64,000 nucleotides of DNA from Lytechinus pictus. Taxonomy: Eukaryota. The notes beneath the pieces are model-generated. The model saw only the letters and a program-made list of their open reading frames with translations. It was not told where the DNA came from and did not search any database. Position numbers and translations under genes: made by a program. Positions 8,975-56,404 of this stretch are shown here, piece after piece. The DNA lies in NCBI RefSeq assembly GCF_037042905.1, contig NC_087249.1, forward strand, positions 51,956,001 to 52,020,000, read 5' to 3'. The stretch's first letter is position 1. Each line of letters begins with the position of its first letter.

Positions 8975-9011
<37 letters not shown>

Positions 9012-9456: not shown

Positions 9457-9487
<31 letters not shown>

Positions 9488-35600: not shown

Positions 35601-37451
35601 TGCCCTGCTCAGATGTCTGATACGGTTAATAATACGTAATATCAGCTCTGCATGCAGTAGGTCCTTCGGAATGAAAATTCTGTATTTGATATTTAATCAA
35701 GTTTTCAAAGGCATCTTGTATTTAGAAATCCCATGTTAATTTATTTTAAATTTCAAAGGAAGAAAATCGACCCAGAAATTAAAAAAAATATTAAAGAGAA
35801 TAAAAATGACAGCGGGAAGAGTTTGCTCAATGCTGGGATCGTCAGGCTGGGGTTAATCCCTCTTCTGTAACTTTTCATCTCTGCAGGCAAGCCTGAGCGC
35901 TGAGCCAGGGTTAAACGATAAACAGCAGCTTCAAAACTGGCCTATATCTCTAACAATGATTTTTCCTCATGGAAACTACATGTAAATTTTTTTTTATTTT
36001 GTTGAAAAAAACATGCTGAAACTTAAGCATGAAGGAAACCAGAGTAACATACCTACGATGATGCTCACTGATTGCTTGTGTTCAGCACTCTCACTTATTT
36101 CTGTGCTGTTCAAGAAATCTTTGCCATGGGCGGTAAAGATAACGTCTGGATCTAGAACCCTTGCCTTCCTGCTGGTAGGTCTAGAATTCATGCTTTCTGA
36201 TGAACCTGTGTAAAAAAAATCATCATTCCTTCTAGAAACCAAGAAGAATGTCAGGTTTACTCATTTAAAACACAAATCATACTTGACTAGCTAGACGTGC
36301 TCAAATGGGCCCCATTGCACAAAATGGTAACTTTGCCATCCTGAGTACGTTTCACGGAGTCCTTGCTTTTAATTGGCTGTTGAGCATCATTACCATGGTA
36401 GTTACCACAGGATAGCAAAGTTACCATAATGATAACTTTTATGCAGCAGGACCCTGAGCCCCATTTAATAAACAGTTGGTATGATAGTAACCGTCTTGCT
36501 GGAATGTCAACTATCATGACAACAATGAAAATTCTGCTTTCTGAGACCCGTTACATAAAACTTTTTGCCATAAAAAAACTCTGGCAAACAAAATTATGCC
36601 ATTGAAAATTACACATAAAAAAACTCTGGCCAAAAATTTGCCAGACTTTTTTATGGCAAAAGTTTTATGCAACGGTATCTGGTTGGCTCTTCCAGTGAAA
36701 GTTAACACTCCATCAAGAGCTGCTATCAGAGCAACTTTTTTGTGAAATAGGGCCTTGACATAAGTTGCAAATCTCATATTTCACTGCCTATTCACAGTCA
36801 TAATAGTCTTAAGGTGTCACATATAACTCATACTCGGATAGCATTTGACCCACATTTTTTTTATGATTGACTTGCAATATATACCATGTTTAGATAAAAA
36901 GTACATTCAACATAAACATAATGGCACGACTCAAATAAAACATAGGTACATATAACTAATTAAATAAACAAAGGAAATAAAAAGATATTGACAAAAAACA
37001 TGTTTCTGTAGCTATTAAGAACATTGTTTACAGAGAATACATAATATTTTTTAATGAAATTTCCACTTATTCAGTCCAACATGAATAGAGTGACCTTGAA
37101 TCTGACCTTGTTCGGCGATGGTGCGCAAAGGAGTTTTGCCTCTCGTCAGATCCTTATGTTTATTTCTCACCATGGAAACTACTTCTCTTGTCAAGAGGAT
37201 CTTGTGCTCTGCAAATCCACGGCTGAAAAATTGAGGCCCGGTGATCCGAGGGACATAGTGGAACAGATCCCTCAATACCTGTTAAATTAAAGGAATAAGA
37301 ATATATATATATATATATATATAAATTCTTTCTGAAGAATTAAAGACGAAACTAGTTAAAGTGGAATATTAGAGCATTCTTTGACTATTCTTCATTTAGT
37401 TTGATTATTATATTCTTTCCGTGACGGGGGACATACTTCGTTATTTCATCG

Positions 37452-37483
<32 letters not shown>

Positions 37484-40400
37484 TATATATATTTCAATTC
37501 ATTTTCATTTCATTTATATCCACAAAAGCAGTAAAATAAATGCACTTTGTATAAACATATATCAAACAAAATCATCATGACATAATTATTGTAAAAGTAG
37601 TTAAAAAATCATAAATCATCTTGTAATTTTTAATCTGTCAAAATTTAGGGAATGAGAATATATATATATATATATTTTTTTTTTCTTTTTCTTTTCATTT
37701 CCATTAATATCCATAATAACAGCAAAATAAACACACTTTACATATCAAAATTGTAATAGAATTTAGATGAAATTGAAATGTTATAAAAGTAGTTGAATAA
37801 TTACTAATCATCATGTAAACTAATTTTTGATAGCTCTATCAAAATTATGGAGGAAACATTGAGAAAGAGCTTTGGTATACTATAAAGGCACAGATTATAA
37901 TAAATATACAGCAAATACTACAATAAGGCACCCCAGTTTTTTTTTTTTTTTTTTATTTATGTATGGAACAAAATACAAAAAATAAAATCAATAGTATATT
38001 AGTATACTGTACACAAACATATCTCTTCAGAATAACACATATCTTTTTTTTGACACTCTTAATCTCTTTCTCATATCTTCATAATACTCTCTTCTGGAGC
38101 AAGAATTGGTGTAATAGATATAAATATTCCTTTTTTTTTTTAAATACATAATTCTTGTCAATGTAAGTGTAAACTAGTTTGCTTAATTTTACTTTTTCTT
38201 GCTCTAAATTTTCCACCATAGAGCAATGTACTTATTACATATATGCTGCATGTATCAGGCCTGCATTCATTGTAAAGCACTAGATCTCTTACATCTGGAT
38301 CCCTGGTTATTATAGGTAAGTGTCAAGTTAAGAGCTCAGGGAATAATTTTCCTGGTATCGCATCGCAATTTGCACCAAATTTTTGAAAGACTGCTATGCA
38401 TAAAGTCTTTTGTAAAGCATATATTTACACAGGACTGTAAATTACTTGGCTGCAGAGCTTTTCTCCTATGACCAAAAATGATATTCAAATTTGTAAAGCA
38501 AAATTATTCCCTGGAGCTACATAAGCAAATAAACAAATCACTATACTACCCTCCCCCCACCCTCATCGAGGTATCGGCCCATCAGGGCACAAGAGTCTGA
38601 AGATTGAAGTCATGTACTCAACTCCACAATGGGGAGGTTATAATATACCAATAAACCTGCACTGCACATTGCATATTGCATAATGTATACATATTCTACA
38701 TTATATGCAGAGCATATGTCATGATAATGGGATATATACCCAGTGCATTTTGTGTGTACCCATAAAAGTGTGCCAGTACAATACACTGTGCTTTGTTATT
38801 GCTTTTATGCTAGCTCATATCCTATACACACAAGAATAACACAACAAAGCCATGCATGCACACACAGTGCAAACACACAACCCGTACCCAAGATATTGTT
38901 AAGGTGCTCTTGTAATGGAACTCAGATTGAGTTTTACACAGTGATGCTGCTGGCCAAATCAGTTCACTTTCCCTGCATTTTCTTCAACAACAGAAACAAA
39001 GCATTGTGAATTTATGCAGTAATTTATCTGGGATTCTACATAAAGCTCAGGAACTTAAAACGAATGTGACTGTCACCCTTCTTTAGTAATTTGCCCACAG
39101 GTAAAGTATCTGGGAAACTACAGTGTCTTATGCACATGCATTGGTTCATGCAGTGGTACATGCATGAAGGCCTGTACCTGCATAAGGTTGCTGCATGTGT
39201 GTGTGTTGTACATGTACGTGTAAGCCTAATGTGTACTGACTCAGTTTGGTTATGTGTGAGGTGTGTGTGTATACAGTTTGCAAGCAAAACTAAATCGAGA
39301 AAAATGATCTGATATATTATTGGAAGAAACATAATTATACAATGAATTTTTCAAATAACATCAGTTGCCTGAAAGGTGATTTCATTTTGGAATAGGAATG
39401 TATTCAATTGGTTTTAAATAAAGTATAAAACCAAGTATTAGGCCTAATTACTTATTTCCCTAGCTCATATCCTTTCTGGTTGAAATTAGTTATCCCCGTC
39501 TCTTCTTGTGATGCAAACTACACATAGATTTTAATATAGCCTAGCCTGCTGGGTTTAGCAAGCATGAATACATGTCAAAGTTCATTGTATAATTTTGTAA
39601 TCCTTCAATTAAACCTGTATCTATATAAATTGTCCTCTGCTTTTATAGAGATCTGGGGAATGAAGTTTAGAGTGAATTGGAATGAGGAAATTATAGTATC
39701 GGTAGCATTAAAACATATACATGTAACGGCCTTCAACACATCCAATAATAGAAAAATCATGAACATTATCAAACCTCAAGCTTCATTCTTGGAATGTCAA
39801 CTTTCCTTTTTTTTTTCTCCAATTAACGGTTTGTTTAATTCACATATGACTTTATTAAGTATGTGCTATATTCATCAGATATATATATTATATTGCAGTA
39901 TTATGTGCTATACTTTGAGATATCCATGATCATTATATAGCCTACCACATGTAGGCGAATCAACATTTTGCTCATTTATTTTCCTTTTGAAAATTCGGTT
40001 CATAAAATCAAAAGACAATTTGTATTTGTTTTGTTTCATAAATAAAAAAAAATGTATGTGCCTATACTTTAATTGGTGATAAAATACATAACCCCATATG
40101 CTTGAATTTGTGAAAGTTAAAGCTGAAACTTAAAGGCCACTTCATGCACCCCAACAAAAGTTTATTGCTTTTATGAAAAGAGAGTAATCCAACAAGAATA
40201 ACACTACAAATTTTATCAAACTTGGATGGAAAATAAGTAATGACATTCTTTAATTTTGCCTAAATAAAAAAAAAGTTATATGCACATCTTGATCTTTATG
40301 CAAATGAGGAGACTGATGTCACCCACTCACTACATGCATTTCTTATGTATTTTATTATATGAAATATTCAAATTTTCTCCTCATTGTACATCAAATGTGA

Positions 40401-43400
40401 AATACATGTATGTTGAATTACCATTGCTTTAATATTTTGTGTTTCAGTAAAGTAATTTGTCAAAATGGTATAATAAAAAAAAAGAAGAAATAGTGAGTCA
40501 GGGACATCATTGCATGTCTATTTGCATGCCACCAAGTTTTGCTTTAAAACTTTAAAATGTCATAACTTTCTTATTTTACATCCGATTGGGATGAAATTTT
40601 CGGTGTTATGCTGGCTTGTTTTCTCTCTACTGATTCAAATCAACATTCTTCTGGAGTGGACTTTCCCTTATAAAGATGAAACCATGACGCTTTTAAAGGT
40701 GAAAAATATTTTAATGGCTGCAAATACTGGTTATTCCACATAACAAGTATGTACCATAACAAAGGGTAAACATGCAATTTTATATTAAATGGCACAACTC
40801 AGTCACACAGATGCACAATGTAAGTTGATTTTATTAATACATTCTGATACACTTGCATATCTGGTTCATTACTTACCTATCTTAATACCTGAACCACAAA
40901 CATCAGAATTGACAAAATTTTATATTTTTTTTACAAATACACCTAGACCTAATACCTTCTTTAATTTTGTTTGATCTCCCAACATTGGAGCTAGTATTGG
41001 ACCTAGACCATGTCCTCCACTATGTCCTCTGCATTCTACCTGGTCCAGTGGATGCCAGGACCATGTACAGAACCAGGAACCAGTAAAGAATTCAGCATCA
41101 TTGGACTAGAAGACATCAAAGATGACTATCGATATGCCTTGGAGACTGGACGTATTACCATGGCAACGTATCGCTTTCGGAGTGGTTCTAACGTCGGAAG
41201 CATGCATCGCTTGTGCAAGGTGCTTGGATCCGCAGGTAATCCACACAGCCGACAGCCCCCCAATAAAAAAAAAATGGATGTACCAAACAAACCCAAAAGG
41301 CTGTTTTGACAGTTTTAATTTGGCCCCTATTTTGTCTTTTTATTTTGGTGAACATTGCATTTTTTCCCTGAAAACTAAGGTACCGGTACATGTACATATA
41401 CAGGTATTCCAAATAGTTTGACGAAGATAAAAATAAAACTATGATAAGCTCTTGCATTAATAATTCTCTGTAATTATGAAGAGGACTTGTCTAATTGATA
41501 TGAAATTTTTTGAGCTAATTTGATGACTCCTAGAAAGATTGAATGAGGTCTAACTCTCCTATTGTCTAATTTGCACAATCGTGTGAAAACAAGCATCGTG
41601 TGAAAACAAGCACTTGTGCTTTAATAGACTAGTCAAAAGTTCCTTTGATAGAAAATGTTTTTCTCTTTGTAATGAGTGTTAGGATCATTCAATAATAGTG
41701 AATTATACACCATTTCAAATCTGAGAATCCTCTTTCAGTGGGGATATTAAATTGAATATTAATTATTATACAACTCCCAAGAATGTTCTATAATCTGATT
41801 GGTCCAAATCGGATCACATGATATTCAGCGAATTGCACTATTGCATCCAAAATGCACTATACTGCACTCTGACGTCATACCAAAAGTACTATCCTGCACT
41901 CTGACGTCAGAGTGCAGGATAGTGCGAGGTCTGGAATTATCTAGAATAATCTAGAATTTAGATCAAATATAGCATTCAGGGCAACTCAGTAACATGGGTG
42001 ATAAGGGGGGTTGTATAAAACAAACAATGCACGCATTATTGTGCATAGAGGACCTAAATAATGAACTCTGTGCTCGACTCGCCAAATGGATATACCGCAC
42101 TCGGTCCTGCTGACCTCGGTGCGGTATATCCATTGGCTCTTCTCGCACATCATTCATTATTTGGCCCTGCATGCACGCGCTTACGTGCATTATTTGTATA
42201 CATGTACTAACAACTCTTTGTAAGTCTTGCCATGTCTTGTCACATACATGTATAGTGTACAGGGAATCATTTTCCTGGTATTGCATTACAATTTGCTCCA
42301 CATTTTTAAAGACTGCTATACATAAAGTCTTTTTTATAACATATTTTTACAAAGGACTGTACATTACTTAGTTGAGAGCTTTTCTCTTATGACCAAAGAT
42401 GCTATTAAAATTTGTAAAGCAAAATTATTGTGAATCTATTGACATGACAGGAGATAAATCTCTTTTGGAGGTCGACTTGATGGCATTTATGAATGGAGGC
42501 GAGGATGGGTCTGGAGTCTATACTATCGAAGATGAGAAGGTGAGATCCTGTAATTCCTTCATATTTCACACCCATTACAGCTCTACACTGTGGTTACATG
42601 GATACACAGTAATATGCAGTCTAGTGCCATATACATGTATGTATGGTCAAGTATTCAACTCATTGAATGCAGTGAACAACGGATAATCAAAGCCCTGCCG
42701 GATCTAGCAACAAGTAATTGGTAGAATGGGGTCGAATGAGTGGAGTTCATTCTTGATCATGTAACAGGATAATGGACCTTCTTAGAAATTCAAGATCCTT
42801 GGGCATGAAGTAACTATGCGAGATAATTTTATCATATGCCTCTTTTAAAAAAGTTTTTGAAGAGCAGTTAGAGATTCTATTAAAAAAATGATTGATTTAT
42901 CTCTATCTGACTAATGAAATATTATTATCTGTAGTATGAACCACACAATCACATTGTGATGTGGGCCCATCAAAGCTCATTAGGGAAGGTCATTTGAATC
43001 ATATTTTACCAACATTTCTAATCAGACTAATGGTCAACAAGGTGGAACTAAAAATAAAAATATTTCAATTTTTATTCTTATTTATAAAAGAAAATACTAC
43101 AGTAGGGTAAACTTTATAAGAGAGATCATGAGAGCTGTGTCAAGGAATAAATTTCAAGTTTCATAAAATACGAATTTAAGTTCAAACAAGTGGAACGCCT
43201 CTGGCAGTCTTGCCCGCATTATGCGATTCAATATAGCAGCAGTGCTGACTTTGAAAACAGCTATTGAATAATTAGTCGCAAAAGAAAACACTCATATGAT
43301 AATAAAATTCTATGTTCGTTGACCCAACATGAACTTTGACCATGATCATGTGACCTACTAAGACATGTGCAAAACATACTTAATTACCCTTATGTTATGT

Positions 43401-46400
43401 CTATGTTTCACAATCTACATGCCAATTCAGCAAAATACCCCCAAAGTTCATTGACCTTAAATGACCTTTGATCTTGGTCATGTGACCTGAAACACCCACA
43501 GGATATTCAGGGATACATGGTTATGAACTAGATCCATAAACTTTTAAAGTTATGACAATTCCACAAATACCCCCAACATTATCAAAGTTTGTTGGCCCTA
43601 AAAGACCTTTGAACTTGATCATGTGACCTGAAACTTGCTTAGGATGTTCAGGGTTACTTAATTGCTCTCATGTCTAAGTTTCATGAACTAGATCCATAAA
43701 TTTTCAGTTATGACAATTCCACAAATACCCCCAAAATGGTCAAAGTTCCTAGACCCTAAATGACCTTTGACCTTAGTCATGTGACCTGAAACTCAGGCAG
43801 GATCTTCAGTAATACTTGATTACCATTATTTTTAAGTTTCATGAACTAGGTCCGTATATTTTCTAAGTTATGATGACATTTCAAAAACTTAACCTTGGTT
43901 AAGATTTCAATGTTGACGACGTCCGTCGGAAAAGCGGCACCTATAGTCTCGCTTTGCTATGCAGGCAAGACGAAAATGGGCAGATGTCTGTGTTACTCCA
44001 TTCTCATATCAGGGGCCAAGAATCTTAATCAGCTGGTAAATGTTTGTTTTTGCTAAAGCCCTCCAGCTGTGCTCGTAAGGCCCCTGCATATTATTACCCA
44101 GTTTTGGGGGATCTAAAACATGGAGAAAAAAATAATAATGAAGCATATACTAAATTCTACCTAACAGCCAAATCAGCTGACCTTTAGGAAGCAGTCTGGC
44201 TCTAGGCCTCCACCTTGGGAGGTTGAGAAAGAGATGCTCACACTGCTGGAGGAGAACCATAAAGTCAAAAGAGAGAACGAAGCACTGAGAACAAAGCTTG
44301 CCAAAGCAGTTGGTAAGAAGGAATAGCATTAAGAATTCAAAGGGGCAAGGCCAAGGTGGTGCTCACTTTCGAATCTTTCAAATCCATTCATGAAGGGCAT
44401 TAATAGTAAAAAAAATTTTGATGGGATATGCACTGGATTACCACAGGACACCAAGGCCTTGGGTTAATTCGAGCCGTCTTTAATGTTTCATGATGGCATG
44501 TATTACTACTTACCTTTGCTAGGAATACTATATAAAAAAATCCACTTTATACTGTTATCAAGATTTTTTCCAACAATAATTTTTTTGCCAGGGATCACAG
44601 GAGCCTACTTTATTTTGCAATGCAAATTTTAAAAGAAATGTGAGGAGGATCATAGATCATAATAATTTGAAGACAGTATTTGATGAAACAATAAATTTGT
44701 GGGGACTCCAGAAGTACTTTCCCTAGCATTACACGAGGATTTTTATTGTATCCTTTAGTATAAAACCTTCACAAGATTTACAAATTTATCATACACAATT
44801 TTGCTATATTTTCCTTTAAAGATGCAAGTCAAATTTAAAAAGTGTAATTATTCCATAATTTCTTACATCTTTACCATTATAAATAATCAGTTTTCAATGA
44901 ATCCTGTATTTTCAGATGTGGGTGACTTGAAGAACATTTTGGAGACTACCATACTCAACATCCAGAAAAAACAAATTGTTCAACCATCACTCAATGAGCA
45001 GACTCCCTCCAGCCAAGTGTCCCAGCCAATCATTGAAACCCTGCACATGACTCAAGACATGGACTTGATATCACAACCTCAGCTCTCCAGTATGGTTGAT
45101 CACAACATGTCGTCAATGCAAGGGTTTCCCTTATCTACATCGGTCACACAGAGACAACCTCCTAGGCGAGCCCCAACAGTAAACTCTGTGAGCCACCAGC
45201 TAACAAGAACATCCTCGTCCACTACTACTGCCCAAAGTCAGTCTAGAGCACCAGAATCAGAAATGGATAACCCTTACATCGTCAGAGTTCAGTCACTAGC
45301 CGAGTCAACGCCCATTCCACCAGCACCGCCTCACCCTGTCGAAGTCCGACCTGCTGGGATTGCTCCACGTGAGAAACAAGGGGGAAATTCCATCAACCAA
45401 TTAAACAGAGGGTACACTAGGCCTTCGGCGCAGATCAACCAGCGAAAGAACAATGTGAGACAGAGGCAGATAAAGACCCCTCATTGGCAGGCTAGCTATG
45501 TTTCAGATGGTATCACTGAACGTCTCAGGATTGGACGGAGTGGGGTGAGCCAAAGCCCTTCCATGAGTACCAATAGTACTATTGCAAATATTTCGGCACC
45601 ATCAATACAACGCATGAAACCTATTACAATGAAGGGTGCGGCTCAAGATGATCATGATGGGGATAAGGTGAGAGACAAGAACATGTAGCTTAGAAGTGCC
45701 ATCTAGATGTACAGATTTCCTCTCGTCATGTCTACATCCTTTAAAAGAGATTGCTTTGTATTAAATTGGTTTATTAAAGGACAAGTCCACCCCAACAAAA
45801 AATTTATTTGAATAAAAAGAGAAAAATCCAACAAGCATAACACTGAAAATTTCATCAAAATCGGATGTAAAATAAGAAAGTTATGACATTTTAAAGTTTC
45901 ACTTAATTTCACAAAACAGTTATATGCACATCCTGGTCGGTATGCAAATGAGGAGACTGATGACGTCATCTACTCACTATTTCTTTTGTATCTAATTATA
46001 TGAAATATTCTAATTTTCTCCTCATTGTCAAGTTAAACAGTGATTAATTCCTCCCTATACATGTGGAATCAGCATTGTTTAATACTATATGGTTCAGTCA
46101 AGTCGGTCCTTATGGACAAATCTGTAAAAAATGAAATATTGTATAATTCAAACAATAAAAAACAAAAGAAATAGTGAGTAATGGACATCATCGACTGACT
46201 CATTTGCATGTCAGTGAGTTGTGCATATCACTATTTTGTGAAAAATAAGCGAAACTTTAAAAAATACCATAACTATCTTATTTTACATCCGATTTTGACG
46301 AAATTTTTGGTGTTATGCTAGTTTGATTTTTCTCTATTTATTTAAATCAACATTTTGCTGGGGTGGACTTGACCTTTAAAAACATCAGCTCGAATGGTCA

Positions 46401-49400
46401 CATTACAAGCTCCTTACACCATGTGAGCTCACAGGACACTACTATTGGGCATCTTGTCATCTCTCCTAAAGGATGAAGACATGATGGGATCGGAGATATT
46501 GTCATCTGGTCATTTTTTCTACTGGATGATCACATGACAAGAAGATTATCTGTACATCTGGATAGCACTTCTAAGCTTCCATAAAATCTTGGTGAATGCT
46601 TACTTTAAACTATAAACTCAGAATCAGAATAAGACAAGATGTCTAACCATAAGCAACAACTGGTGCTCCCCCTCACAGCCTCCCCCCCCCCCCATCCTAA
46701 AAACATACCCCTAGATTAAAATTATAATACAGATTTGGAAGTCTGCTACCCCCGTTACACTATAAACTCCCCTTCCCATATTTTGGGGTTAAAGCAAAAT
46801 ATTGTGTGAAATATTGTGAATTCATGACCATAGCATCAAGATCATCTCCTAATTTTCATATTTTTTTCAATCTTCAGCTGGTCGAGCTTGTTGTGGGCTC
46901 GGGCATCTGGTTACCAAGGAAACAGCTAAAGCTGTCGCAGAGAACCAAAGGACTCAGCCAGTACACCAGGAAGTTAGTCATGCTCCTGTTCAACATGAAA
47001 GAACTCAGTACCAGCTCTGTTACTGGCTTCAAGGCAACAGGCAAAGGCAGTGAGAATGCCATCAAGCGTCCGGCCCTGGACCCCAAGAGAGTTCATGCCA
47101 TAATCAGTAAGTCCGTTGAAACACAACATTTGTCCTAAGGGGGACACTCAACAAACTATCACTGTACAATTTTTAAATTTAAATCCAGTAGCGAACAGTT
47201 TAATAATGGGGAAATGTTTTGGGGTCTTTCCATGAAGTTGGGGCATGAATTGGGTCATTTCAGCATAACTCAAGACTAACTATACGGTGCGTATAAAAAA
47301 AACGGGACAGATTTGAAAAGTCTATAAAATTTTTTTTTCAAATTATGATGTCTATATTTTGATGTTAATAGGTGCTCTAAGGTCCTATCTTTCAAATGCC
47401 ATTAAAGAAATCAGTTTCGTTCATGCTTGAGCGAACACGGAATGTTTTTGTCTGGGGTTAAAAAGGAGGCTTGCGCCAAAATGGCATAAAATTATAAATA
47501 TGATGATCGGACTTCTTGCTAATTAGCAGACTTCCTCTTAACCTTTTCATTATCTTTGCCATAATTTCAAATTATGCGGTCAAAATTCATTTTCAGATCT
47601 ATTTGCTTGAATTGTTCTGTTGTTGTTTCTTTTTAATATGCTCTCTGTTAGCTTCGAATATTCCTTTAAGCTAAAACAATTTTGTTTCAACCGAAGTATG
47701 GGAGAGCGTGGATTTTTTATCAAATCCTTTCATTGTGTGTTACAAAGGTTATGGTGCCTTTTGAGTTTTGAACTGTGCCACACAGATGGGCGGGGGCTCG
47801 GGATGCTCCCCCCTCAATTGAAATAAATCATGACCAAGAAAAAAAGTGGACAGGAAATAAAAGGAAAGATAGAAAGTAAAATATGATATTGTTTTCTGAA
47901 TATTTTAAATGTCAAAATCTATCACAAAATTTTATATTGTAATAAAAAAGTGGGAATATTTGCGTGCTCACTTCGCTCGCTTTCAACTTTTTAATACATT
48001 TTACCCGATCTGCCATACATGTATCTAGCTCCTTCAAAATTGACTCAATACACCATTGCCATTGAAAGACATGAATCCCTTCCTGTGTTTCCTGTCAAGC
48101 AATTAAACTTGGTCAAGGAATAAATGACCCCTTGAAAAATAGATTCATGTCTTTTAAAGGTACATAACATAATTTGTTTCACATAATAAAAGGATTTGAA
48201 TAATCAAGTTTTCCCAATTAATAATGCAAATCTTCCATGCTTGGGTTGACAAAAAATCTTCTTTTCTCAGATACTTATTAAGGAAAATTAAAAGGTAAGA
48301 GAAGTTTAAATGAAAAAACCAAACAAAATAATTCAAGTAAATAAATAAATTTGTAAATAAAATTTAACAGCATAATTCGAAAATTGTGGCACAGATAATG
48401 AAAAGGTCAAGAGGAAGTCTCCTGATTAGCAAGAAGTCTGATCATCATATTACTCATATTCTGCAATTCTGGCGCAAGCCTCTTTTTGAACAAAAACGTC
48501 CCGTGTTCGCTCAAGCATGAACAAATTTTTTTTTTTTTTGCATTTCAAAGATAAGATTTTAGAGCATCTATTAACATCAAAATATAAATATCATAATTTG
48601 AAACAATTTTTTTATAGACTTTTCTAAACTGTCCCGTTTTTTTAATACGCACTGTATAAGATATTTTTTGTTTGTAGGCTTTATATTTGTATTAAATGGC
48701 ATTACATTTTACTGGAAATTTGGGGCTATTTAGACTCATTTTGAGCCAAACAGAGAATAATGCTGTACATAAAGAGTTACAACTGTTGTAACTTTGCCAT
48801 TATGGCAACTACCATGGTAACCTTGATTTTGATTGGCTGCTGAGCCCTGTTGCCATGGTAGTTGCCATAATGGCAAAGTTACAACAGCTGTAACTCTTAA
48901 TGAAATGGGCCCCAGGTCCTAAAATTCAAATTATGGCAATTAGGCTGACCAACACTTGATACAATATGCACATTTCCTTGTTTAATCAGGTAGCTACTTG
49001 TAAATACTTCAGATTTCCTTTGCATAGTTCAATTTATTTTTCAAAAGGAAATTTAAAAATAGTCACTATGCTACTAGGTGTCCACCAAATGTGACATTTC
49101 CCAATGCTACATGGACACTTATAATTTTTAAATTTTCTTTTGAAACTATACAGATGCACTAGGAAATCTGAGGTATTTAGCTACCTGACTTGACAAGTAA
49201 ATGTACTTATTGATTCAAGTTTTGGTCAGTCTAATTGCAATAATTTGACTTTTAAGACCAGATGTAAATATCCCAATACACAGACACCATGTCCATTAAA
49301 CAACCTTATACATAAAATGTACACTGTTTTACTAAATAACTTTAATAATAAAGAATTAAGCTAAATATATGTAGCCCTAAATTTACAGTAAAATGTATGG

Positions 49401-52400
49401 TCTTAATACTTATGTAAAGCCTACAAACGTAAAATGTATAGTATAATTATTATTGAGTTATGCTGAAATGTCACAATATGTGCCCCAACTTCATGGGAAG
49501 ACCCTTTTACAAATTTGTCTCAAGTGCATAATATATACATGTAGAATAGAGCATTTCCAGAAGCAGACAAGGTGGAGGATAAAACCAAAGAAACCTGTGC
49601 ATCAAACAGTGATAAATCAATGTTTTTAGGGTCTGATGCACAGATTCCCTCCATGTAACGCCACCTGAAACTTCTCTATACAGTACACCTTACTGAAGTT
49701 GATTCTTCTGGGTCACTGGTGGACTAGGTATGACTTAGGAACAAATTGTCTTGCGCTTCAATGAAAAAGGTTTTGTGAGTGCATCCATTTCATTTGCTCC
49801 AATGACTATGATTTGTATTCTCACTTCATTCTAAGGCAAAAATCCATATCACAACCCTAAATGTAGACAGGAAAAATTGTCAGGCCACCCTTGTAAATAC
49901 CTTTACCTTCCATATTGTCCTTATGAACAAGGAAATCGTAATTTGAATGATTCCAGTGAAAAATAAGGCTAATGACGGATATTTAGCACGTGTGAAACCA
50001 AACTAGAACATGATTAGAATCACAAATGCTATTATCACAGTCATGATTACAAAACAATCATCATCACGTGTGAAAAGGCCCTGAGTGACCTCAGACTCAG
50101 AGTAAGCTTCCCAGAGAATGCTAGGTTTCCAATCCAGATATCACTCAAGGTAATTTTGGGTCAATATACATGTACCTTGATCTTGTCATCAACAATGATC
50201 CGACTCTCTACTTAAATATTTTTTTATGTCAGTCTTATGTAAGTAAAGTGAACCCAAATAAACTTGCCAAAACCCAAAAAGCTCTATCAGGCTTGATCAA
50301 GTTTACAGATCAAAAAGGAAATTGAGCAGAAGCATTTTCTCATCCTATTTCATTACTTGACACCAATATTGTGTCCTATTTTTCTGAATTGCATTATTTT
50401 AATTTATCTTTTACCAGCTGCTGTTCAGAAGCGCTTCCCTGCAGCTTCACCATTCAAAGTCAAGCAAGTCATGAGTCAGAAGCTGATGGATATCCGAAAG
50501 ACAGTCCGGAACAAACAACTCAAGAATGCCACATGGAAACAAAGAGGATTACACCATGGCATAATCTAAGATGGACCAGTTTCCTGCATTTAAGAGACAT
50601 TGAAATTCAACTATATCAGTTTATTCACTCAAGTTGAGTTCTTGTTGGAATTTTTATCAACTAAAAGTTAAGGCCACTGCCAAAAACCATCTGAAAGCAA
50701 CAACAATTAGACTATGTTCATTAGACCACCAGGAGATAAAAGGGGTTTTTCCCTAAAAGGACCCTGTTTGGAATTTTCATTGTTGCCTTGGTCTATCAAT
50801 ATCTCTTTGGTCTACATGCTAGCCAAAGCAGAAAAAAAAAAAGTATATGAACTTGTGAAAATTATCACTGGGGAGTGCTTCACAAAGATTTAAGTGTGAC
50901 TTTTTGAGTCCCACTTTAATTCCCATTTGCTTCCTGTATAAAAGTCATCACACAATTAGTTAAATCGAGCTGAGGATCCGTGCTACGTAGTATTAATCAA
51001 TACGATTGCATGTTATATCATCTGCACGTCTGCATTTAATCGTGACTCTGAGTCACACTTAACTCTTTGTGAAATCTATCCCTGGTCCTGGTTGTGATAA
51101 TCTCATTGTGATACCGGTAATCAATTACCTATTACATTATGCAGCTCTACAGAAACCATAGTGATTTTGTACAGTGTATATAATGTAAAGAAAATCACAC
51201 TAAAAAGCACATTGTTTTGGGGGTGCTTGCAAGTTTTTTTTATGTTAAATCAAAGCTGTATAGTTATGCAGGTTAATATTTTTGCTTTTCCACAATATAT
51301 TTGTTCATCCGTCCAGAAGTTGAGATTCAGTAAAAAAAAACTTTGCTATTGGTACATGTACACTGGTTGACAATAGGTTTGTCGATAAACAGCATTAGTA
51401 TTTTGTCTAAGACTTATAGAGAGACTAAGAAGACATAAAGTTGATGAAGATTTATTGCAAAGGATTAAGAGAAAAAATGCACCAGCTATCTTTCTATTTG
51501 CTTAGTTTGTGAAATTGTTTTAGGACTAGTGACAGCATGGCTTGTGTCTATCGAGGGATGATCCATGTTACAATGTACTTGTAAGAACTGTTCATGATAA
51601 AGATGATTTCATTACTTGGTAGCAAAAAGTCACATCTGCTGATTTGCCAAACTAGCAGGCAAGAAAGTAATATATGGTATGATCATTGTTCACCTTCAAA
51701 TAAAGCAGTCAGCATTACCTATTTGTTCTATGTTTCAAATCAATGACTTATAAATTATGATATATTCAAAACAGAGTTTAAATTAAAAAAAAAACAGGTT
51801 TGAATATTTCATATGATGATATGAATCATATATAATGAGATAAAAATGTTAATTCACATTGGTGTCAATGTAGAAACCTTTGTACGACACAGACACATTG
51901 TTTTGGTGAATATCGTTGTTTGTTACCAACTAATTGTATAAAATTTGGTAAAACTACATAACACATTTTGTTTGTTTGTTTGCTGTTTGGTTTTCCTTAA
52001 ATTATGAATCTACTGCCATAAGCCTGGAAAATGTGTTTATAAAACATGTCTTCTTGCCCATTTGCGATGTGTTTTAAAGATATCATTGACATTGCAAAGC
52101 TTGAATTTGAATGACACTGAGTTTTGAAGGTTTTTAGAAAGAAATCCAGTGATAGCAAAATTGATAATTTTGATAAAATTTGATAACAGTGCCAGCATTT
52201 GACCAAACAGCACCGTTTCTCTGTTCCTGGTTTTTTGTATGTTGTTTTTATCAATTTAATTCAATTTCACTCATTATTAAAGCAAACATACTACCACACT
52301 TTGTCAAATTTTTGAATTCCACAGTTCATCCTCTGTTCTCCCATTCCCTTTCTATATCCCTCTCTCTTCCCATTCCCTTTCTATCTCTGTCTCTCTCTTT

Positions 52401-55400
52401 CTCTCCATTCCTTTGTATTTCCCCTCTCTTAACATTTTAAAAGTATTATTTCCTTTCAAGGTTTGCCATACAAAGCACATATGTGGGTGCGTTGTGGTCT
52501 GGTGGTTCTGACTCTTGCCTTTCAAACAGAGGGTCGTGGGTTCGAATCCTAGCCATGGCGTGTTTTCCTTCAGCAAGAAATGTATCCACACTGTGCTGCA
52601 CTCGACCCAGGTGAGGTGAATGGACACCTGGCAGGATTGATTCCTTGCATGCACTGAGCGCCGGTGATGGTAGCTCGAGCTAAAGCCAGGGTAATGATAG
52701 CAAGCGCTTTGTATCCTCAGGCAAAAAGCGCTATATAAATCCAGCTATTATTATTATAAGGAAAGGGGTATTTAGAGGGCTGCTGTATAGTATTCAGGGG
52801 TTATCAAATAATACTGGAACTTAAAAAACAGAATAAATAAAGAGCATATATGCTTAGCTTTTCATTGATACTTCACTTGTGTATCTTTAGCTGACACTAT
52901 AAATGACTATTTAATTTTTAACTATTATAACTATTATATAAATATTTAACTATTTAATGCTGAACACAATTTAAGAATTTCATTTTGTCCAAATTTTGGA
53001 AAGTAATATGCAAAGGTGATTCATGGATATGCCTGCCAAATGAATGGATCTATACCATCTTGCAGGTATGCATGGTCTCAGAAAAGTTGAGGTGTTGCTC
53101 TGCTATATTTGGAACATAAAATTGTAAAATTTAATAATCTTTCAACATCAGCCCTCTAAATCAATTAACTTTAAACCTAGTATTTGATAAGAACTGTAAT
53201 TAACCCCATCATATTATACTTGAAAAGTCGATTCACTAGGTGAACTGGGCCCCATTGCATAAAAGTTACTGTAACTTTGCCATCCAATGGTAACTTCCCT
53301 AAAATCCTTGATTCTGATTGGCTGTTGAGCATTGTTACCATGATAGTTACCACAGGATGACTATTACTATTATAGTTAGTTTTGTGCAACAGGGCCCTGG
53401 AACTGAAAAACCTCTCAAATTTTCAGTACCAAATATCACCATGCAACCAAAAAAAAAGAAGAAAATTTATGGTCAATTATGCTATTTAAAGAGAAACAAA
53501 AATTAAGGATGTTTTAAACCATTGATTAATGATTTTTTTTTTTAGTTTCACTGCATGGGACTGAATTTTGTAAATAATGAAATAAAATGCTATGTTTTCA
53601 ATAGTTTTCACCAAACACTTGTACATTCTTGTCTATTCTTGTTTTATTGCATGACTTTTTATAACAGGTTTACTACCAGCCAATCAAATCAAATAATGTC
53701 AGTAGCTTTAGATTTTTTATTGCAAATTTGTTATTATAACTAATTTCAGGAACAGGCACCAGATCCTTGTTAACAACAATTTTAATCTAAAAATATCACA
53801 TTTCAGCGGAGTGTTTCATGAAATGACTTGTCAGACGTTTTATCTGACATTAACCATGTAGTAACAGTGCTTCTTAGCCAATTAAAATCAGGGAAATTTG
53901 TCAGACTTGTCGGACAAAAATGTTGATGAAATGCCCCCCCTGGTGTAAATCAAAATTGACTGAGACTCATTTGCACCAAAGAAAGAGCCCTGGTCGTGTC
54001 TTTTAAGTTGTGTGTACATTGTAACTTACAAACTGCTTGAAACACAAACCAGATTGGATGATAGTTGAAATGGTTCTCTACAGTTGTTATCCTGGCTATA
54101 GCACCTACATGTACCTCTAGCTGCCAAATAGACACTTTACCAGACCTTAAATGTTAATAGTTTTAGGCCTTCTTTCCATTGGGCACATTTCTATATTAAA
54201 GCACAATTAAAGCAGGAAATTAAAAAAAAGGGGAACAACAAATCTTTAAGGTCAAAGAGAGGGGTATTGAGGCCAATCAAAGGGGTATCTAAGGATATGA
54301 CCTTCGATGGGCTTGGATTAATTAAAGCCCAGGATCTACATGTACATGTAGAGTGGTACCAAGTAGGTTCATACATGTACCGCGTTCCCACCGTAAAAAT
54401 TTAAAAGGGAAAAATGAAGAGTGACCGCCCGCTCCTTCCCCGGTTTGCATACAGTAGGCCTACCTTGTATACTGCTTCCATGAACTTCTGATCATTCTTA
54501 GCAGCAAGGTCTATCTTCCTATCCAGAATCAACTGACTGACTGGCCTGGAGTAATCGCAGAGCATGAAATGCATGATGGGAAGGAATTCCTTTGGAGATC
54601 CTTTGGCAAGGCTACAACAATAAATGCAAAATATTCAAAAATGAAAAATACATATCATATATTTTAAACTGAATGTTTTTCTAGATTGTGAAATCACCCA
54701 TTCCTACTTATATATTACACAATCCTTATAGCACTTCAAGAAACTTTCTGTATTAAGCACTCTTATCAATATAATGTGTTAAAATTATTTATATGGACAA
54801 ACCTGTTTGCTATCATGTTCAAATATTTCAAATACAGTACTTTCACTCAAAGGTCGTTCTTGACACCATGAAATCCTGCCTGACTTAGCAACAAGTAATT
54901 TCTGCAAACTATATTCCAAATATTGCAGTGTATTTTATATCTAAAATGGTTTTAAGGGATACCTAAGTCCTAGGTTCCCGAGGAAGAGACATCCATAACT
55001 CTGAATTACTTTATGGCAAACAGGCTATTAAAACAAGAAAATACACTGTTATGGCAAACCATATTGATTGTAATAGAGTGACATTCACAGCACAAAACGG
55101 AAACATTAATGGCCACATTTTTTTTTCTCTGCAGTTCCCTTCTTAAACTGACATGATTAGCACTGAATTTACAATTTATCAAATTCCTTTGCCAGACATC
55201 ATAATCTTTGTTTATCCACTATATGGCTAAATTTGTATTTGAAATTCTAATATACACTGTAAATTCAGAATTAAGATCATGAATGATAAAATCCATTTAA
55301 GAAATAAATGGCTTTTATCAAAAATTAAACAGCATTAAAAATATTTATAACCGGTACTCTTTGGGGACGGCAGGAAAGGAACAATGGCAAAATGTTAGAA

Positions 55401-56404
55401 GGTTTAAAATAGCAAAAACCGTTTGATGCAATTTCATTGTAAACAATACTTATAAATGCAAGAAAAAATACTATAAAAAAACATATTTTGGTTCTAATTA
55501 TGCAAAGTAGAGGCAGAAGGGGAGGGGGAGGGGGTGGGTGATCACCTGTAGCCCACCCTTCCCAAGTTTCATATGTTCTCCCCCTCTATTCCACTACACA
55601 AACAGTGAAAGTTCACCCCCTATCCTGGTTATTGCTGCTTAAGTTACATCCAAGTCTGAGTCAAGTCAATATACTAATATTATAGGTTATGATTCGAATC
55701 AGTGATAGGTCAATACGCCATCACGTGACCATAGCTGCGAGGATCACATTTGTTATATTCTGGGTTTTGACGTCACCTCAGAGAATATAACTGCGTTGTA
55801 TTGTCAATTGCGGCATTATATTTACTAAGGTGACGTCACTCGCTGCTTACAAGTTGCATAATCAGGTAGTTTATTTGATGTACGCGCTAATTGTTAATGC
55901 GTAAATTGCACGAAGAACGTGCTTGATGTATTTAAAAAAAAAAAATTATTATGACGTTGATGGATCAGAGCTGTAGCAAGAATTTCAGGTTGGAGCCAGA
56001 TGAAGAATGTAATCTCTGATGGCGAATCCATATAGACTATATAATATAACAGATATTGCCTGGTCTATCGTTTTGATAACATTTCAACTCCCCTCCGAAG
56101 CTATATTTTTCCCTCAGCGCTGCGCGCTTGGGGCAAAATATAATCCCTTGGGACAAATATAACTCCGTCTGGGAGAGGAAATGTTATATTCAAACTCTAG
56201 GTAGGCAATATCCATATATTAGTACTCATTAAGAATTCAACATTTCATTGAATACAGTAGGCTGATACTAATAAAAGTTTTATATAGAACCTAGATCTGA
56301 AAGCTAATACAGCACCTGATAAAGTCTAGTTCCTTCGGGTATTTTGCACGCTTCAGCTCAGTCTGTAAGCTCTTGATGTTTCCTTTCACATCACCGGTTG
56401 CCAT
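32476..56404 (-). CDS. CEP44: Centrosomal protein of 44 kDa; complement(join(56404-56316,54611-54464,37278-37107,36205-36053,33643-33576,32655-32476)), about 270 aa
   Basis: Spliced N-terminus MATGDVKGNIKSLQTELKRAKYP...LAKGSPKEFLPIMHF...KNDQKFMEAVYKVLRDLFHY.P....QFFSRGFAEHKI matches the CEP44 N-terminal domain as recalled from the human protein. C-terminal LETRVTLLE resembles human LLSRVTLLE. Phases are consistent. Confidence 0.9.
33576..33643 (-). CDS. CEP44: CEP44 short exon (GKTPVPLRGYSTQEYSPDLLLNN)
   Basis: cttttacAG acceptor, GTGAGT donor; phase 1-0 bridges the flanking exons. Confidence 0.6.
33844..34158. mobile_element. Harbinger-like MITE
   Basis: TIR TGGCCCGTATTCT.AAGTC.GGTTTAACTTA / TAAGTTAAACCTGACCTCAGAATACGGGCCA. 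Confidence 0.75.
34615..34750 (+). mobile_element. RTE-clade LINE 3' fragment
   Basis: Translates ...ETGISLRELNMLLQNRTAWRKFVRGVTGSQERLDGT, like the RTE/BovB ORF C-terminus, followed by an AAC-rich tail. Confidence 0.7.
35046..35633. mobile_element. Asymmetric element (terminal long hairpin plus short IR pair), Crypton-like
   Basis: Hairpin 35046-35200; TATTATTTACCAAATCAGACATCT (about 35194) is inverted relative to AGATGTCTGATACGGTTAATAATA (about 35611). Confidence 0.55.
36053..36205 (-). CDS. CEP44: CEP44 exon (GSSESMNSRP...VSIIV)
   Basis: T-rich acceptor acacAG, GTATGT donor, phase 1-1. Confidence 0.7.
37107..37278 (-). CDS. CEP44: CEP44 exon (VLRDLFHYVP...GFAEHKI...AEQ)
   Basis: aacAG acceptor, GTCAGA donor (an alternative same-phase donor would end the exon at 37095). 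Continues the CEP44 domain 17 kb after the previous exon. Confidence 0.9.
41010..41235 (+). CDS. BEND5-like coding exon 1
   Basis: ACCATG start, CAG|GTAATC donor, phase 1. Confidence 0.8.
41010..50569 (+). CDS. BEN-domain protein, BEND5-like, about 530 aa; join(41010-41235,42451-42539,44168-44312,44916-45667,46878-47106,50418-50569); nested antisense in a CEP44 intron
   Basis: Six phase-compatible GT-AG exons totalling 1593 nt. C-terminal GSGIWL...SQYTRKLVMLLF..KELSTSSVTG...RPALDPKRVHAII...KVKQVMSQKLMDIRK is a BEN domain resembling recalled BEND5 (LGSGIWV..SKYTKNL..RSVTG..KIMDINK). Central coiled coil; N-terminal KVLGSAGDKSLLE resembles BEND5 QILALAEDKSDLE. Confidence 0.88.
41761..42200. mobile_element. 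Asymmetric Crypton-like element
   Basis: TTATACAACTCCC / GGGGGTTGTATAA IR pair, then terminal hairpin centred on GGATATACCGCAC...GTGCGGTATATCC. Confidence 0.55.
42451..42539 (+). CDS. BEND5-like coding exon 2 (GDKSLLEVDL...EDEK)
   Basis: gacAG acceptor, GTGAGA donor, phase 1-0. Confidence 0.8.
43184..43975 (-). mobile_element. Non-autonomous Helentron (HINE/DINE-like) with about 150-bp internal tandem repeats
   Basis: Subterminal IRs (GTCTTGCC.GCAT / ATGCAGGCAAGAC) plus a nearby partial IR, A/T-run insertion site, three ..GACCTTTGA.CTTG.TCATGTGACCTGAAAC units; same family as 63836-64000. Confidence 0.75.
44168..44312 (+). CDS. BEND5-like coding exon 3 (coiled coil LLEENHKVKRENEALRTKL)
   Basis: aacAG acceptor, GTAAGA donor, phase 0-1. 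Confidence 0.8.
44916..45667 (+). CDS. BEND5-like coding exon 4 (S/Q/P-rich linker)
   Basis: tttcAG acceptor, GTGAGA donor, 752 nt, phase 1-0. Confidence 0.85.
45778..46375. mobile_element. Kolobok-like MITE (opposite orientation; older copy at about 40130-40670)
   Basis: TTAA|AGGACAAGTCCACCCC ... GGGGTGGACTTGACCT|TTAA. Confidence 0.85.
46878..47106 (+). CDS. BEND5-like coding exon 5 (BEN domain, N-half)
   Basis: cttcAG acceptor, GTAAGT donor, phase 0-1. Confidence 0.9.
47285..48654. mobile_element. Tc1/mariner-like non-autonomous element with about 290-bp TIRs
   Basis: TA|CGGTGCGTAT..AAAACGGGACAG ... CTGTCCCGTTTT..ATACGCACTG|TA. Confidence 0.85.
50418..50569 (+). CDS. BEND5-like terminal coding exon (BEN domain, C-half)
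   Basis: taccAG acceptor, phase 1, KLMDIRK, TAA at 50567-50569. Confidence 0.88.
52483..52758 (+). mobile_element. tRNA-derived SINE, related subfamily
   Basis: B box GGTTCGAATCC, same central body as 2640-2960, ends AAGCGCTATATAAAT..(TAT)n. Confidence 0.85.
54464..54611 (-). CDS. CEP44: CEP44 exon (LAKGSPKEFLP...MEAVYK)
   Basis: tgtAG acceptor, GTAGGC donor, 148 nt, phase 2-0. Confidence 0.93.
55681..56220. mobile_element. Asymmetric Crypton-like element
   Basis: Degenerate TATAGG.TATGATTCG / CGAATCCATATAG.CTATA IR pair, then hairpin GATATTGCCT...AGGCAATATC. Confidence 0.45.
56316..56404 (-). CDS. CEP44: CEP44 first coding exon (MATGDVKGNIKSLQTELKRAKYPKELDFI)
   Basis: Acceptor at 56412-56411, ACCATGG start, GT donor at 56315, 89 coding nt, phase 2. 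Confidence 0.92.

What the first reader, a model, noticed from the sequence alone, without database searches (positions are those of the whole stretch)
37279..54463. Complete six-exon BEND5-like gene nested antisense in a 17-kb CEP44 intron
The CEP44 domain is split between ...MEAVYK (54464) and VLRDLFHY... (37278), and the intervening intron holds an intact 530-aa BEN-domain gene on the opposite strand. BEN-solo proteins (Insensitive, BEND5/6) are sequence-specific repressors or insulator factors. Human BEND5 is, as I recall, also intron-nested but in a different host (AGBL4). With the gene at 1-10396, two adjacent housekeeping genes would each host an antisense regulator, suggesting lineage-specific regulators colonising broadly transcribed introns.
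Basis: partly seen in the sequence, partly recalled or inferred. Interest (0 to 1): 0.7.

Follow-up and report, generated by a model that had tools for sequence, protein, structure and literature searches.

The report
BEN-domain gene nested inside CEP44 intron
A complete sea-urchin gene for a probable DNA-binding repressor (BEN domain) lies on the opposite strand inside a 17-kb intron of the centrosome gene CEP44; the layout is real and shared with a second urchin, but it is already in public annotation and is an ordinary kind of gene arrangement.

Summary
Window 37279-54463 is a 17,185-bp GT-AG, phase-0 intron of single-copy CEP44 on the minus strand. Pfam PF15007 is split exactly at profile position 76/77 across it.

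On the plus strand the intron holds a six-exon, 1,593-nt CDS. Its 530-aa product is identical to NCBI's "uncharacterized protein LOC129261107 [Lytechinus pictus]". Spliced transcript contigs from two studies match the first four exons with 0-2 mismatches.

The protein has four parts:
- an echinoid-only N-terminal domain;
- a predicted coiled coil;
- a long disordered linker;
- one C-terminal BEN domain, whose model superposes on the Drosophila Insensitive BEN-DNA structure (TM 0.88).

It is therefore a BEN-solo factor, probably a sequence-specific repressor.

"BEND5-like" holds only for architecture. Fish BEND5 matches eleven other L. pictus places better than this gene.

The nesting is conserved in Strongylocentrotus purpuratus. 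In Diadema the orthologue sits beside CWF19L2, with no CEP44 exon within 10 kb. The sea-star reciprocal-best homologue lies antisense inside DEPDC5.

Intron positions are shared across echinoderm classes, so this is not a retrocopy or a recent insertion.

Verdict: real, correctly read, already annotated, of modest interest. The scan has only re-read this same stretch, not found it on other DNA.

The parts
56316..56404 (-). CEP44 first coding exon (MATGDVKGNIKSLQTELKRAKYPKELDFI-, 89 nt, ends phase 2). An acceptor-like ag lies just upstream of the ATG, which suggests a separate 5'UTR exon.
   Evidence: Sequence read. tblastn finds the S. purpuratus counterpart at L001 19715-19611. blastn shows 86% identity.
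54464..54611 (-). CEP44 coding exon 2 (148 nt), ending ...KFMEAVYK|gt.
   Evidence: Pfam PF15007 profile 39-76, E 2.8e-9. Genome-wide PF15007 hit at profile 26-76, 54.9 bits. Splice sites read.
37279..54463 (-). CEP44 intron of 17,185 bp (gt...ag, phase 0). It contains the whole BEN gene on the other strand.
   Evidence: The orthologous S. purpuratus intron is about 11.8 kb and also contains the BEN orthologue.
37051..37278 (-). CEP44 coding exon 3, apparently the last. It runs from VLRDLFHY... to a TAA stop at 37051-37053 and gives a 154-aa protein that consists of the CEP44 domain only.
   Evidence: Pfam PF15007 profile 77-122, E 1.3e-11. Sequence read and model built. The S. purpuratus annotation gives a 134-aa product. 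No further blocks conserved between the two urchins lie downstream.
41010..41235 (+). BEN gene exon 1, CDS part (residues 1-75 plus one base). It encodes the echinoid-specific N-terminal domain. The transcript contig extends 185 nt upstream of 41000.
   Evidence: Transcript contigs X1 record 1 and X15 record 7 cover 41000-41232 with 0 mismatches. The model is identical to P0002. The own-genome protein search also finds it.
42451..42539 (+). BEN gene exon 2 (89 nt, residues 76-105).
   Evidence: A 90-nt gap in the transcript contig coordinates (record 419-508) fits this exon within the border ambiguity of the listed pieces. It is needed for identity with P0002. The own-genome search hits 42423-42545.
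44168..44312 (+). BEN gene exon 3 (residues 106-153), the start of the predicted coiled coil.
   Evidence: Contig pieces 44166-44311 with 0 mismatches. 87% nucleotide identity to S. purpuratus. A helix at residues 121-152 in the model.
44916..45667 (+). BEN gene exon 4 (residues 154-404): the end of the coil and the long disordered Ser/Pro/Gln-rich linker.
   Evidence: Contig pieces 44915-45665 with 0 to 2 mismatches. pLDDT below 50 over most of it. 64% identity to S. purpuratus over residues 176-404, against 93% in the BEN domain.
46878..47106 (+). BEN gene exon 5 (residues 405-480), the first two thirds of the BEN domain. The Pfam BEN match starts at residue 433, about 46962.
   Evidence: Pfam BEN on the exon alone, E 6.3e-6. 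In the full protein BEN covers residues 433-509, 36.5 bits against a 23.2 cut-off. RNA depth is seen in the 46800-46999 bin.
50418..50569 (+). BEN gene exon 6, CDS part (residues 481-530 plus TAA): the last BEN helix. The BEN match ends at about 50503. About 385 nt of 3'UTR follow, judged from the contig length.
   Evidence: Identity with P0002. The Pfam BEN match runs unbroken across the exon 5/6 joint. 92% nucleotide identity to S. purpuratus. The exon 5/6 joint was not covered by the reads call.

Best explanation
Window 37279-54463 is the intron between the second and third coding exons of the single-copy Lytechinus pictus CEP44 gene on the minus strand. On the plus strand it contains the complete, expressed, six-exon gene LOC129261107.

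The 530-aa product has four parts:
- a conserved N-terminal domain found only in echinoids (residues 1-75), fold unknown;
- a predicted coiled coil (about 121-174);
- a fast-evolving disordered linker (about 176-404);
- one C-terminal BEN domain (about 400-520) with the fold of the DNA-bound Insensitive BEN domain.

Inferred mechanism, by analogy with Insv, Elba and BEND6: the protein pairs up, its BEN domains bind a short, probably palindromic DNA motif, and it represses or insulates nearby genes.

The nesting itself is most simply a neutral result of local rearrangement in the lineage leading to camarodont urchins. The gene was already a multi-exon gene beside CWF19L2 before it came to lie between CEP44 exons.

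Shown here: gene structures, transcription and splicing of exons 1-4, single copy, conservation, and the BEN fold. Inferred: DNA binding, dimerisation, repression, and neutrality of the nesting.
For: Host gene:
- The CEP44 Pfam profile is split at 76/77 over the two exons.
- GT-AG borders and an in-frame three-exon model.
- CEP44 is single-copy in the 812-Mb genome.

Nested gene:
- The six-exon CDS is identical to P0002, NCBI LOC129261107 of L. pictus.
- Spliced contigs of 2,171 and 1,993 nt from two studies cover exons 1, 3 and 4 with 0-2 mismatches, and a 90-nt gap in them fits exon 2.
- Raw RNA reads of a close relative give depth of about 5-10 on exons and about 0 in the unique intron bins.
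- The gene is single-copy; its six exon hits all lie at this locus.

Protein:
- BEN is the only Pfam domain over its cut-off, at residues 433-509.
- The AF2 model has pLDDT 78-93 over residues 400-520. Its best Foldseek match is the Insv BEN-DNA complex 4ix7, TM 0.88, rmsd 1.7 A.
- The closest solved relatives by sequence are Insv, E 2.8e-4, and BEND6, E 1e-3.
- Identity to S. purpuratus and Diadema is 83/68% in the N-terminal domain, 91/63% in the coil, 93/67% in BEN and 64/27% in the linker.
- Five of six differences from the sister species in exon 1 are synonymous.

Arrangement:
- The same nesting is found in S. purpuratus.
- Intron positions are shared with the Diadema, Patiria and Apostichopus homologues.
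- BEN-solo biology is taken from PMC4281564.
Against: - No read was laid across the host junction 54464>37278 or across the exon 5/6 joint of the BEN gene.
- DNA binding, the target motif and repression are inferred from relatives that share only about 24-26% identity in the BEN domain.
- The homodimer test on the coil gave no verdict.
- The N-terminal domain could not be folded (pLDDT about 45), so part of the protein's function is unknown.
- Nothing here shows whether the nesting is neutral or regulatory.
- In Diadema, absence of CEP44 exons was tested only within 10 kb on each side.
Confidence: 0.85

Rival explanations
1. The nested gene is the echinoderm orthologue of vertebrate BEND5, which is the specific sense of the reader's label 'BEND5-like'.
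For: It has the same overall plan: a coiled coil followed by a single C-terminal BEN domain. A fish BEND5 representative (P0035) is among the 38 library hits at E 3.5e-4. Pairwise BLASTP of the BEN domains gives E 2e-12 at 26% identity.
Against: The reciprocal test fails. P0035 hits eleven other L. pictus places better (best E 2.6e-11, 45% identity), and this gene ranks 12th at E 6.7e-4. The urchin N-terminal domain does not match the BEND5 N-terminus (hhalign probability 0.2%). Fish BEND6-like and insect BEND6-like or BTB-BEN proteins score as well or better.
Confidence: 0.06
2. The nesting is functional. Transcription of CEP44 through the antisense BEN gene, or a shared chromatin domain, gates expression of the repressor, and selection keeps the arrangement.
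For: The arrangement is kept in two urchin families. The sea-star reciprocal-best homologue is also antisense inside a broadly used gene, DEPDC5.
Against: No expression comparison of host and guest was possible. Nested genes are common, and this scan noted others in the same genome. The host differs between urchin and sea star, and in Diadema no CEP44 exon lies within 10 kb of the orthologue. That speaks against a conserved partnership between host and guest.
Confidence: 0.12
3. The BEN gene is a recent insertion into the intron: a retrocopy, or a gene domesticated from a transposon or virus.
For: BEN domains also occur in viral and repeat-associated proteins (general knowledge). The L. pictus genome has a tandem array of BEN-like units and a BEN match inside a 2,496-aa open frame elsewhere. 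The intron is full of high-copy repeats.
Against: The gene has five spliceosomal introns and is single-copy. Its exon borders are the same in Diadema, and two of them recur in the Patiria and Apostichopus homologues. Conservation is domain-wise with mostly synonymous change in exon 1. The repeats lie in its introns, not its exons.
Confidence: 0.02
4. The two CEP44 halves come from different paralogues or are joined by a misassembly.
For: None found.
Against: PF15007 matches only these two exons in the whole genome, apart from one hit elsewhere at E 8.8. There is no N in the window. The phase and the profile positions fit exactly. The S. purpuratus assembly and annotation join the same exons around the same nested gene.
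Confidence: 0.01

Closest known systems
Strongylocentrotus purpuratus LOC100892520 (P0003, 534 aa) inside S. purpuratus CEP44
   Same: It is the orthologue: 76% identity, the same six exons, and the same antisense position between the second and third CEP44 coding exons, with CWF19L2 upstream.
   Different: Its host intron is about 11.8 kb rather than 17.2 kb, and its CDS spans 4.7 kb rather than 9.6 kb. The L. pictus introns are swollen by repeats.
Drosophila Insensitive (Insv), a BEN-solo repressor (PDB 4ix7)
   Same: It has a single C-terminal BEN domain and no other known domain. It is the best structural match (TM 0.88, rmsd 1.7 A) and the best PDB sequence match. The stretches SVTG and D..K align between the two proteins. 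PMC4281564 names Ser, Asp and Lys residues as base contacts; mapping them onto those stretches is my inference.
   Different: Identity is only about 24%. Nothing shows orthology. Binding of CCAATTGG or of Su(H)/CSL is untested. The urchin protein has an extra conserved N-terminal domain.
Vertebrate BEND6 and BEND5
   Same: They share the coiled coil followed by a single BEN domain. Fish BEND6-like (P0016) and BEND5 (P0035) are among the few library hits. The BEND6 BEN domain 7yul matches at E 1e-3.
   Different: It is not a reciprocal best hit of either one. There is no N-terminal similarity to BEND5.
Patiria miniata LOC119730488 (P0007, 381 aa)
   Same: It is the reciprocal-best homologue, and its only hit in L. 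pictus is the BEN exon of this gene. It shares the coil-plus-BEN plan and two intron positions. It also lies on the opposite strand inside the span of another gene.
   Different: Its host is DEPDC5, not CEP44. It lacks the echinoid N-terminal domain. Identity is 42% in the BEN domain.
Nested (intronic, antisense) genes of animal genomes in general
   Same: A complete gene lies within one intron of a host gene on the other strand.
   Different: Nothing sets this case apart mechanistically. The scan noted other such cases in this genome.

Membership tests
BEN domain (Pfam PF10523) | Profile match over Pfam's gathering score | tested here: met
   36.5 bits against a 23.2 cut-off, residues 433-509, profile 2-71 of 76. 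The orthologues score 39.1 and 33.9 bits.
BEN domain (Pfam PF10523) | Helical BEN fold as in the solved BEN-DNA complexes | tested here: met
   AF2 pLDDT is 78-93 over residues 400-520. The top 20 Foldseek hits are all BEN domains. The best is 4ix7 at TM 0.88, rmsd 1.7 A.
BEN domain (Pfam PF10523) | Sequence-specific DNA binding | not testable with these tools
   Only alignment is available. SVTG and D505/K508 align to Insv stretches, in a family where Ser, Asp and Lys make base contacts.
BEN-solo factors (Insv, Elba1/2, BEND5/6 type) | One BEN domain and no other recognised domain such as BTB | tested here: met
   BEN is the only Pfam family over its cut-off in P0002, P0003 and P0004.
BEN-solo factors (Insv, Elba1/2, BEND5/6 type) | Homodimerisation | tested here: inconclusive
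   The model has long helices at residues 121-152 and 155-174. The complex prediction gave no verdict.
BEND5 orthologue group | Reciprocal best hit with vertebrate BEND5 | tested here: not met
   Fish BEND5 (P0035) hits eleven other L. pictus places better. This gene ranks 12th at E 6.7e-4, against 2.6e-11 for the best.
BEND5 orthologue group | Shared N-terminal region (MYAFVRF... in BEND5) | tested here: not met
   hhalign of the echinoid N-terminal alignment against P0035 residues 1-80 gives probability 0.2%.
CEP44 (Pfam PF15007), host gene | CEP44 domain over the gathering score, contiguous across the exons | tested here: met
   37.7 and 45.3 bits against a cut-off of 27. Profile 39-76 and 77-122 fall on the two flanking exons. 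The genome search extends exon 2 to profile 26-76.
CEP44 (Pfam PF15007), host gene | Long C-terminal region as in vertebrate CEP44 (about 390 aa, from memory) | tested here: not met
   The three-exon model stops after 154 aa. The S. purpuratus product is 134 aa. No further conserved exon lies downstream. Alternative 3' exons were not excluded by RNA.
Nested intronic gene | The whole transcription unit lies within one intron of the host, between host exons that are spliced together | tested here: met
   The BEN transcript runs from about 40815 to about 50954, inside 37279-54463. Host splicing is inferred from the profile, the phase and the orthologue's annotation. It was not read from RNA.

The most novel reading that the evidence does not exclude
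This echinoderm BEN-solo lineage has come to lie antisense inside introns of different broadly expressed host genes more than once: CEP44 in camarodont urchins and DEPDC5 in a sea star. From memory only, BEND5 lies inside AGBL4 in vertebrates. If so, host read-through transcription may be used to gate a repressor whose echinoid-specific N-terminal domain is a new fold.
Probability: 0.08. Interest if true: 0.5.

Novelty: new member of a known kind. Interest (0 to 1): 0.22.

Why it matters
This is mainly a quality check.

Biologically, it adds an uncharacterised, echinoderm-restricted BEN-solo factor to the list of candidate repressor or insulator proteins. L. pictus is a sea urchin in which gene knock-outs are practicable.

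The nested layout is at least as old as the split between Lytechinus and Strongylocentrotus. It is not visible in Diadema, and the host is different in a sea star.

Nothing here changes how nested genes or BEN proteins are understood. The gene and its position are already in NCBI annotation, under the name 'uncharacterized protein'.

Tried and rejected
- My first gene model had five exons and 472 aa, starting at ATG 42399. The transcript contigs and P0002 showed an upstream exon at 41010-41235 and an exon-2 acceptor at 42451, so I dropped it.
- A candidate exon at about 50041-50151, between exons 5 and 6, has an in-frame stop. I rejected it by reading the sequence.
- The search for homologous proteins with the 295-aa ORF missed the 530-aa protein because of the length window. 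A 309-aa stop-free stretch reached it.
- The look-up of encoding contigs found no record for P0002 or P0008.
- I searched for CEP44 exons around the BEN homologues of Diadema, Patiria and Apostichopus. Only chance-level tblastn hits came up. The best, E 0.088 at L002 19215-19123, did not look like exon 3 on inspection.
- N-terminal domain: the atlas feature search gave only unnamed clusters at 0.89. AF2 gave pLDDT about 30-45 in the whole protein and 44.6 alone. hhalign to BEND5 found nothing. No fold can be assigned.
- Complex prediction on two copies of residues 106-180 gave no verdict (score 0.31, mark 0.32). This is evidence neither for nor against binding.
- Papers: the ones I read for BEND5 and AGBL4 show adjacency only. 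No paper was found on a sea-urchin BEN gene. The 2013 Insv structure paper is not in the searchable library.
- I did not build a BEN-domain tree. The session held no BEND2, BEND3, BEND4, BEND7, BANP or NACC sequences as ids, and about 100 residues would resolve little.
Full report
**Observation**

The window is G000:C5:51956001-52020000 of an 812-Mb genome. Database hits identify the organism as Lytechinus pictus.

On the minus strand, two ORF pieces hit Pfam CEP44 (PF15007). Piece 54401-54574 matches profile positions 39-76 and piece 37051-37275 matches 77-122, so the domain is cut exactly between 76 and 77.

The splice sites, read from the sequence, are as follows:
- Exon 2 is 54611-54464 and ends ...KFMEAVYK|gt.
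- Exon 3 begins ag|VLRDLFHY at 37278.
- The first coding exon is 56404-56316 (MATGDVKG...).

The three exons join in frame to 154 aa. The intron is 37279-54463, 17,185 bp, exactly the coordinates of the finding. The window has no N.

**The nested gene**

My first model had five exons and 472 aa. It was wrong at the 5' end.

I laid four runs on 41000-46999. Two spliced contigs appeared: X1 record 1 (2,171 nt) and X15 record 7 (1,993 nt), from different studies. Their pieces lie on 41000-41232, 44166-44311 and 44915-45665 with 0-2 mismatches. A 90-nt gap in record coordinates fits an exon at 42451-42539.

The resulting six exons are 41010-41235, 42451-42539, 44168-44312, 44916-45667, 46878-47106 and 50418-50569. 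All are GT-AG. They give 1,593 nt and 530 aa, letter for letter identical to P0002, NCBI "uncharacterized protein LOC129261107 [Lytechinus pictus]".

Other expression evidence from the same call:
- Raw RNA-seq of a close relative (organism B, about 3% fixed differences) gives depth of about 5-10 over the exon bins.
- The same runs give about 0 in the unique intron bins 41400-41599, 42600-42999, 44400-44799 and 46400-46799.
- The very deep bins at 41600-42600, 43000-44000 and 45600-46400 are high-copy repeats inside the gene's introns.

A protein search of the whole genome finds the six exons only here, in order. The exon 5/6 joint was outside the stretch I laid. It rests on three things: identity with P0002, a Pfam BEN match that runs unbroken across it, and conservation in S. 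purpuratus.

**The protein**

Pfam finds only BEN, at residues 433-509, with 36.5 bits against a cut-off of 23.2. An AlphaFold2 model built from five echinoderm sequences shows the following:

| Region | Residues | pLDDT |
|---|---|---|
| BEN domain | 400-520 | 78-93 |
| Two long helices | 121-174 | about 70-79 |
| Everything else | remainder | below 50 |

The top 20 Foldseek matches in the PDB are all BEN domains. The first is the Insensitive BEN-DNA complex 4ix7 (TM 0.88, rmsd 1.7 A), followed by NACC1, Bsg25A and BEND6. By sequence the best solved relatives are Insv (E 2.8e-4) and BEND6 (E 1e-3).

Identity to the S. purpuratus and Diadema orthologues, by region:

| Region | S. purpuratus | Diadema |
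|---|---|---|
| N-terminal 75 residues | 83% | 68% |
| Coil | 91% | 63% |
| Linker | 64% | 27% |
| BEN domain | 93% | 67% |

Five of six fixed differences from organism B in exon 1 are synonymous, against 9 of 19 in the linker exon.

The N-terminal domain is absent from the sea-star and sea-cucumber homologues. I could not fold it or link it to anything.

**Family placement**

An exhaustive HMMER scan of 1.84 billion representatives gave only 38 hits at E <= 1e-3. Outside echinoids the best are:
- Patiria miniata LOC119730488 (P0007, E 2.5e-17);
- an Apostichopus protein (P0008, E 6.8e-10);
- then insect BEND6-like and BTB-BEN proteins, fish BEND6-like (P0016) and fish BEND5 (P0035).

I ran reciprocal tests against the L. 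pictus genome:
- P0007 hits only the BEN exon of this gene, so it is the likely sea-star orthologue.
- Fish BEND5 hits eleven other places better. The best is E 2.6e-11, while this gene ranks 12th at E 6.7e-4.
- Fish BEND6-like puts this gene fifth.

The gene is therefore a BEN-solo factor of an echinoderm lineage. It is not a BEND5 orthologue.

**Host and neighbours**

CEP44 is single-copy. PF15007 matches only the two window exons, apart from one hit elsewhere at E 8.8.

In both urchins CEP44 appears to be a short, domain-only gene: 154 aa here and 134 aa in the S. purpuratus annotation. No further conserved block lies between exon 3 and the 3' end of CWF19L2 at window 28728-28888.

An F-box gene lies head-to-head with CEP44 at 63041-63292.

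**History of the arrangement**

In S. purpuratus the layout matches the window:
- CWF19L2 (+) ends at L001 1375.
- CEP44 exons 3, 2 and 1 lie at 6655-6512, 18588-18427 and 19715-19611 on the minus strand.
- The BEN orthologue spans 10001-14745 (+) between CEP44 exons 3 and 2.

The nesting is therefore at least as old as the split between Lytechinus and Strongylocentrotus. From general knowledge that is tens of millions of years.

In Diadema antillarum the orthologue (45% identity, same six exon borders) again follows CWF19L2. No CEP44 exon is detectable within 10 kb on either side.

In Patiria the homologue lies on the opposite strand inside the annotated span of DEPDC5. In Apostichopus it sits in a locus with SOBP.

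The exon borders at the coil/"DV..L" junction and inside the BEN domain after "AII" recur in Patiria and Apostichopus. The gene was therefore a multi-exon gene before these lineages split and was not retroposed into the CEP44 intron.

**Mechanism**

The following steps are inferred, not shown. By analogy with Insv, Elba and BEND6, the protein would pair up and bind a short DNA motif through its BEN domains. Insv homodimers bind CCAATTGG palindromes and repress, and BEND6 is a CSL corepressor (PMC4281564). It would then repress or insulate nearby genes.

The stretches SVTG and D505...K508 align with Insv. In that family Ser, Asp and Lys residues make base-specific contacts. Mapping the named residues onto those stretches is my inference.

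Whether CEP44 transcription affects the nested gene is untested.

**Verdict**

The finding is real and exactly read, but ordinary. Both genes are annotated in NCBI, nested antisense genes are common, and this scan noted others in the same genome. The specific BEND5 label fails. What is mildly new is the characterisation of an echinoderm BEN-solo lineage with an echinoid-only N-terminal domain, and its different hosts in urchin and sea star.

Noticed in passing
window 37051-56404 (-): CEP44 in L. pictus reads as a three-coding-exon, 154-aa protein that is little more than the CEP44 domain. S. purpuratus is annotated at 134 aa. No conserved downstream exons were found, unlike the roughly 390-aa vertebrate protein (length from memory).
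   Followed up: partly
window 63041-63292 (+), with a GC-richer stretch at 60000-62000: An F-box gene (Pfam F-box-like, E 5.6e-12) lies head-to-head with CEP44. From memory, human CEP44 and FBXO8 are also divergent neighbours, so this may be old synteny. FBXO8 identity was not tested.
   Followed up: partly
window 3-1961 (-): A 653-aa stop-free frame runs off the window start. It is Pro/Ser-rich and acidic and has no Pfam domain. It is the large exon of the other antisense gene noted by the scan inside CWF19L2 (s1-325081). Nothing shows that it is a regulator.
   Followed up: partly
window 41236-41310 (+): Reads of the sister species and a lower-depth X15 contig (12.4 against 37.6) continue past the exon-1 donor at 41235. 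This suggests a retained intron or a short isoform (ORF 41010-41309, 99 aa).
   Followed up: no
window 41600-42600, 43000-44000, 45600-46400: High-copy repeats that are abundantly transcribed sit in the BEN gene's introns, with summed contig depth up to about 3e5. They include a 158-bp tandem unit at 43523-43873. They account for much of the size difference from the S. purpuratus locus.
   Followed up: partly
G000:C11:24494447-24496169 and G000:C12:27624519-27624743: Elsewhere in the genome, five BEN-like units lie about 395 bp apart in tandem, and a BEN match sits inside a 2,496-aa open frame. The BEN family has at least 13 further loci here.
   Followed up: no
window 18985-20435 (+): Two adjacent ORFs (228 and 253 aa) look like fragments of a reverse-transcriptase (LINE-type) element inside a CWF19L2 intron. 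This is judged by eye only.
   Followed up: no
L006 (Patiria miniata) 10001-18117 (+): The sea-star reciprocal-best homologue of the BEN gene lies on the opposite strand inside the annotated span of DEPDC5. The DEPDC5 exons were not mapped.
   Followed up: partly
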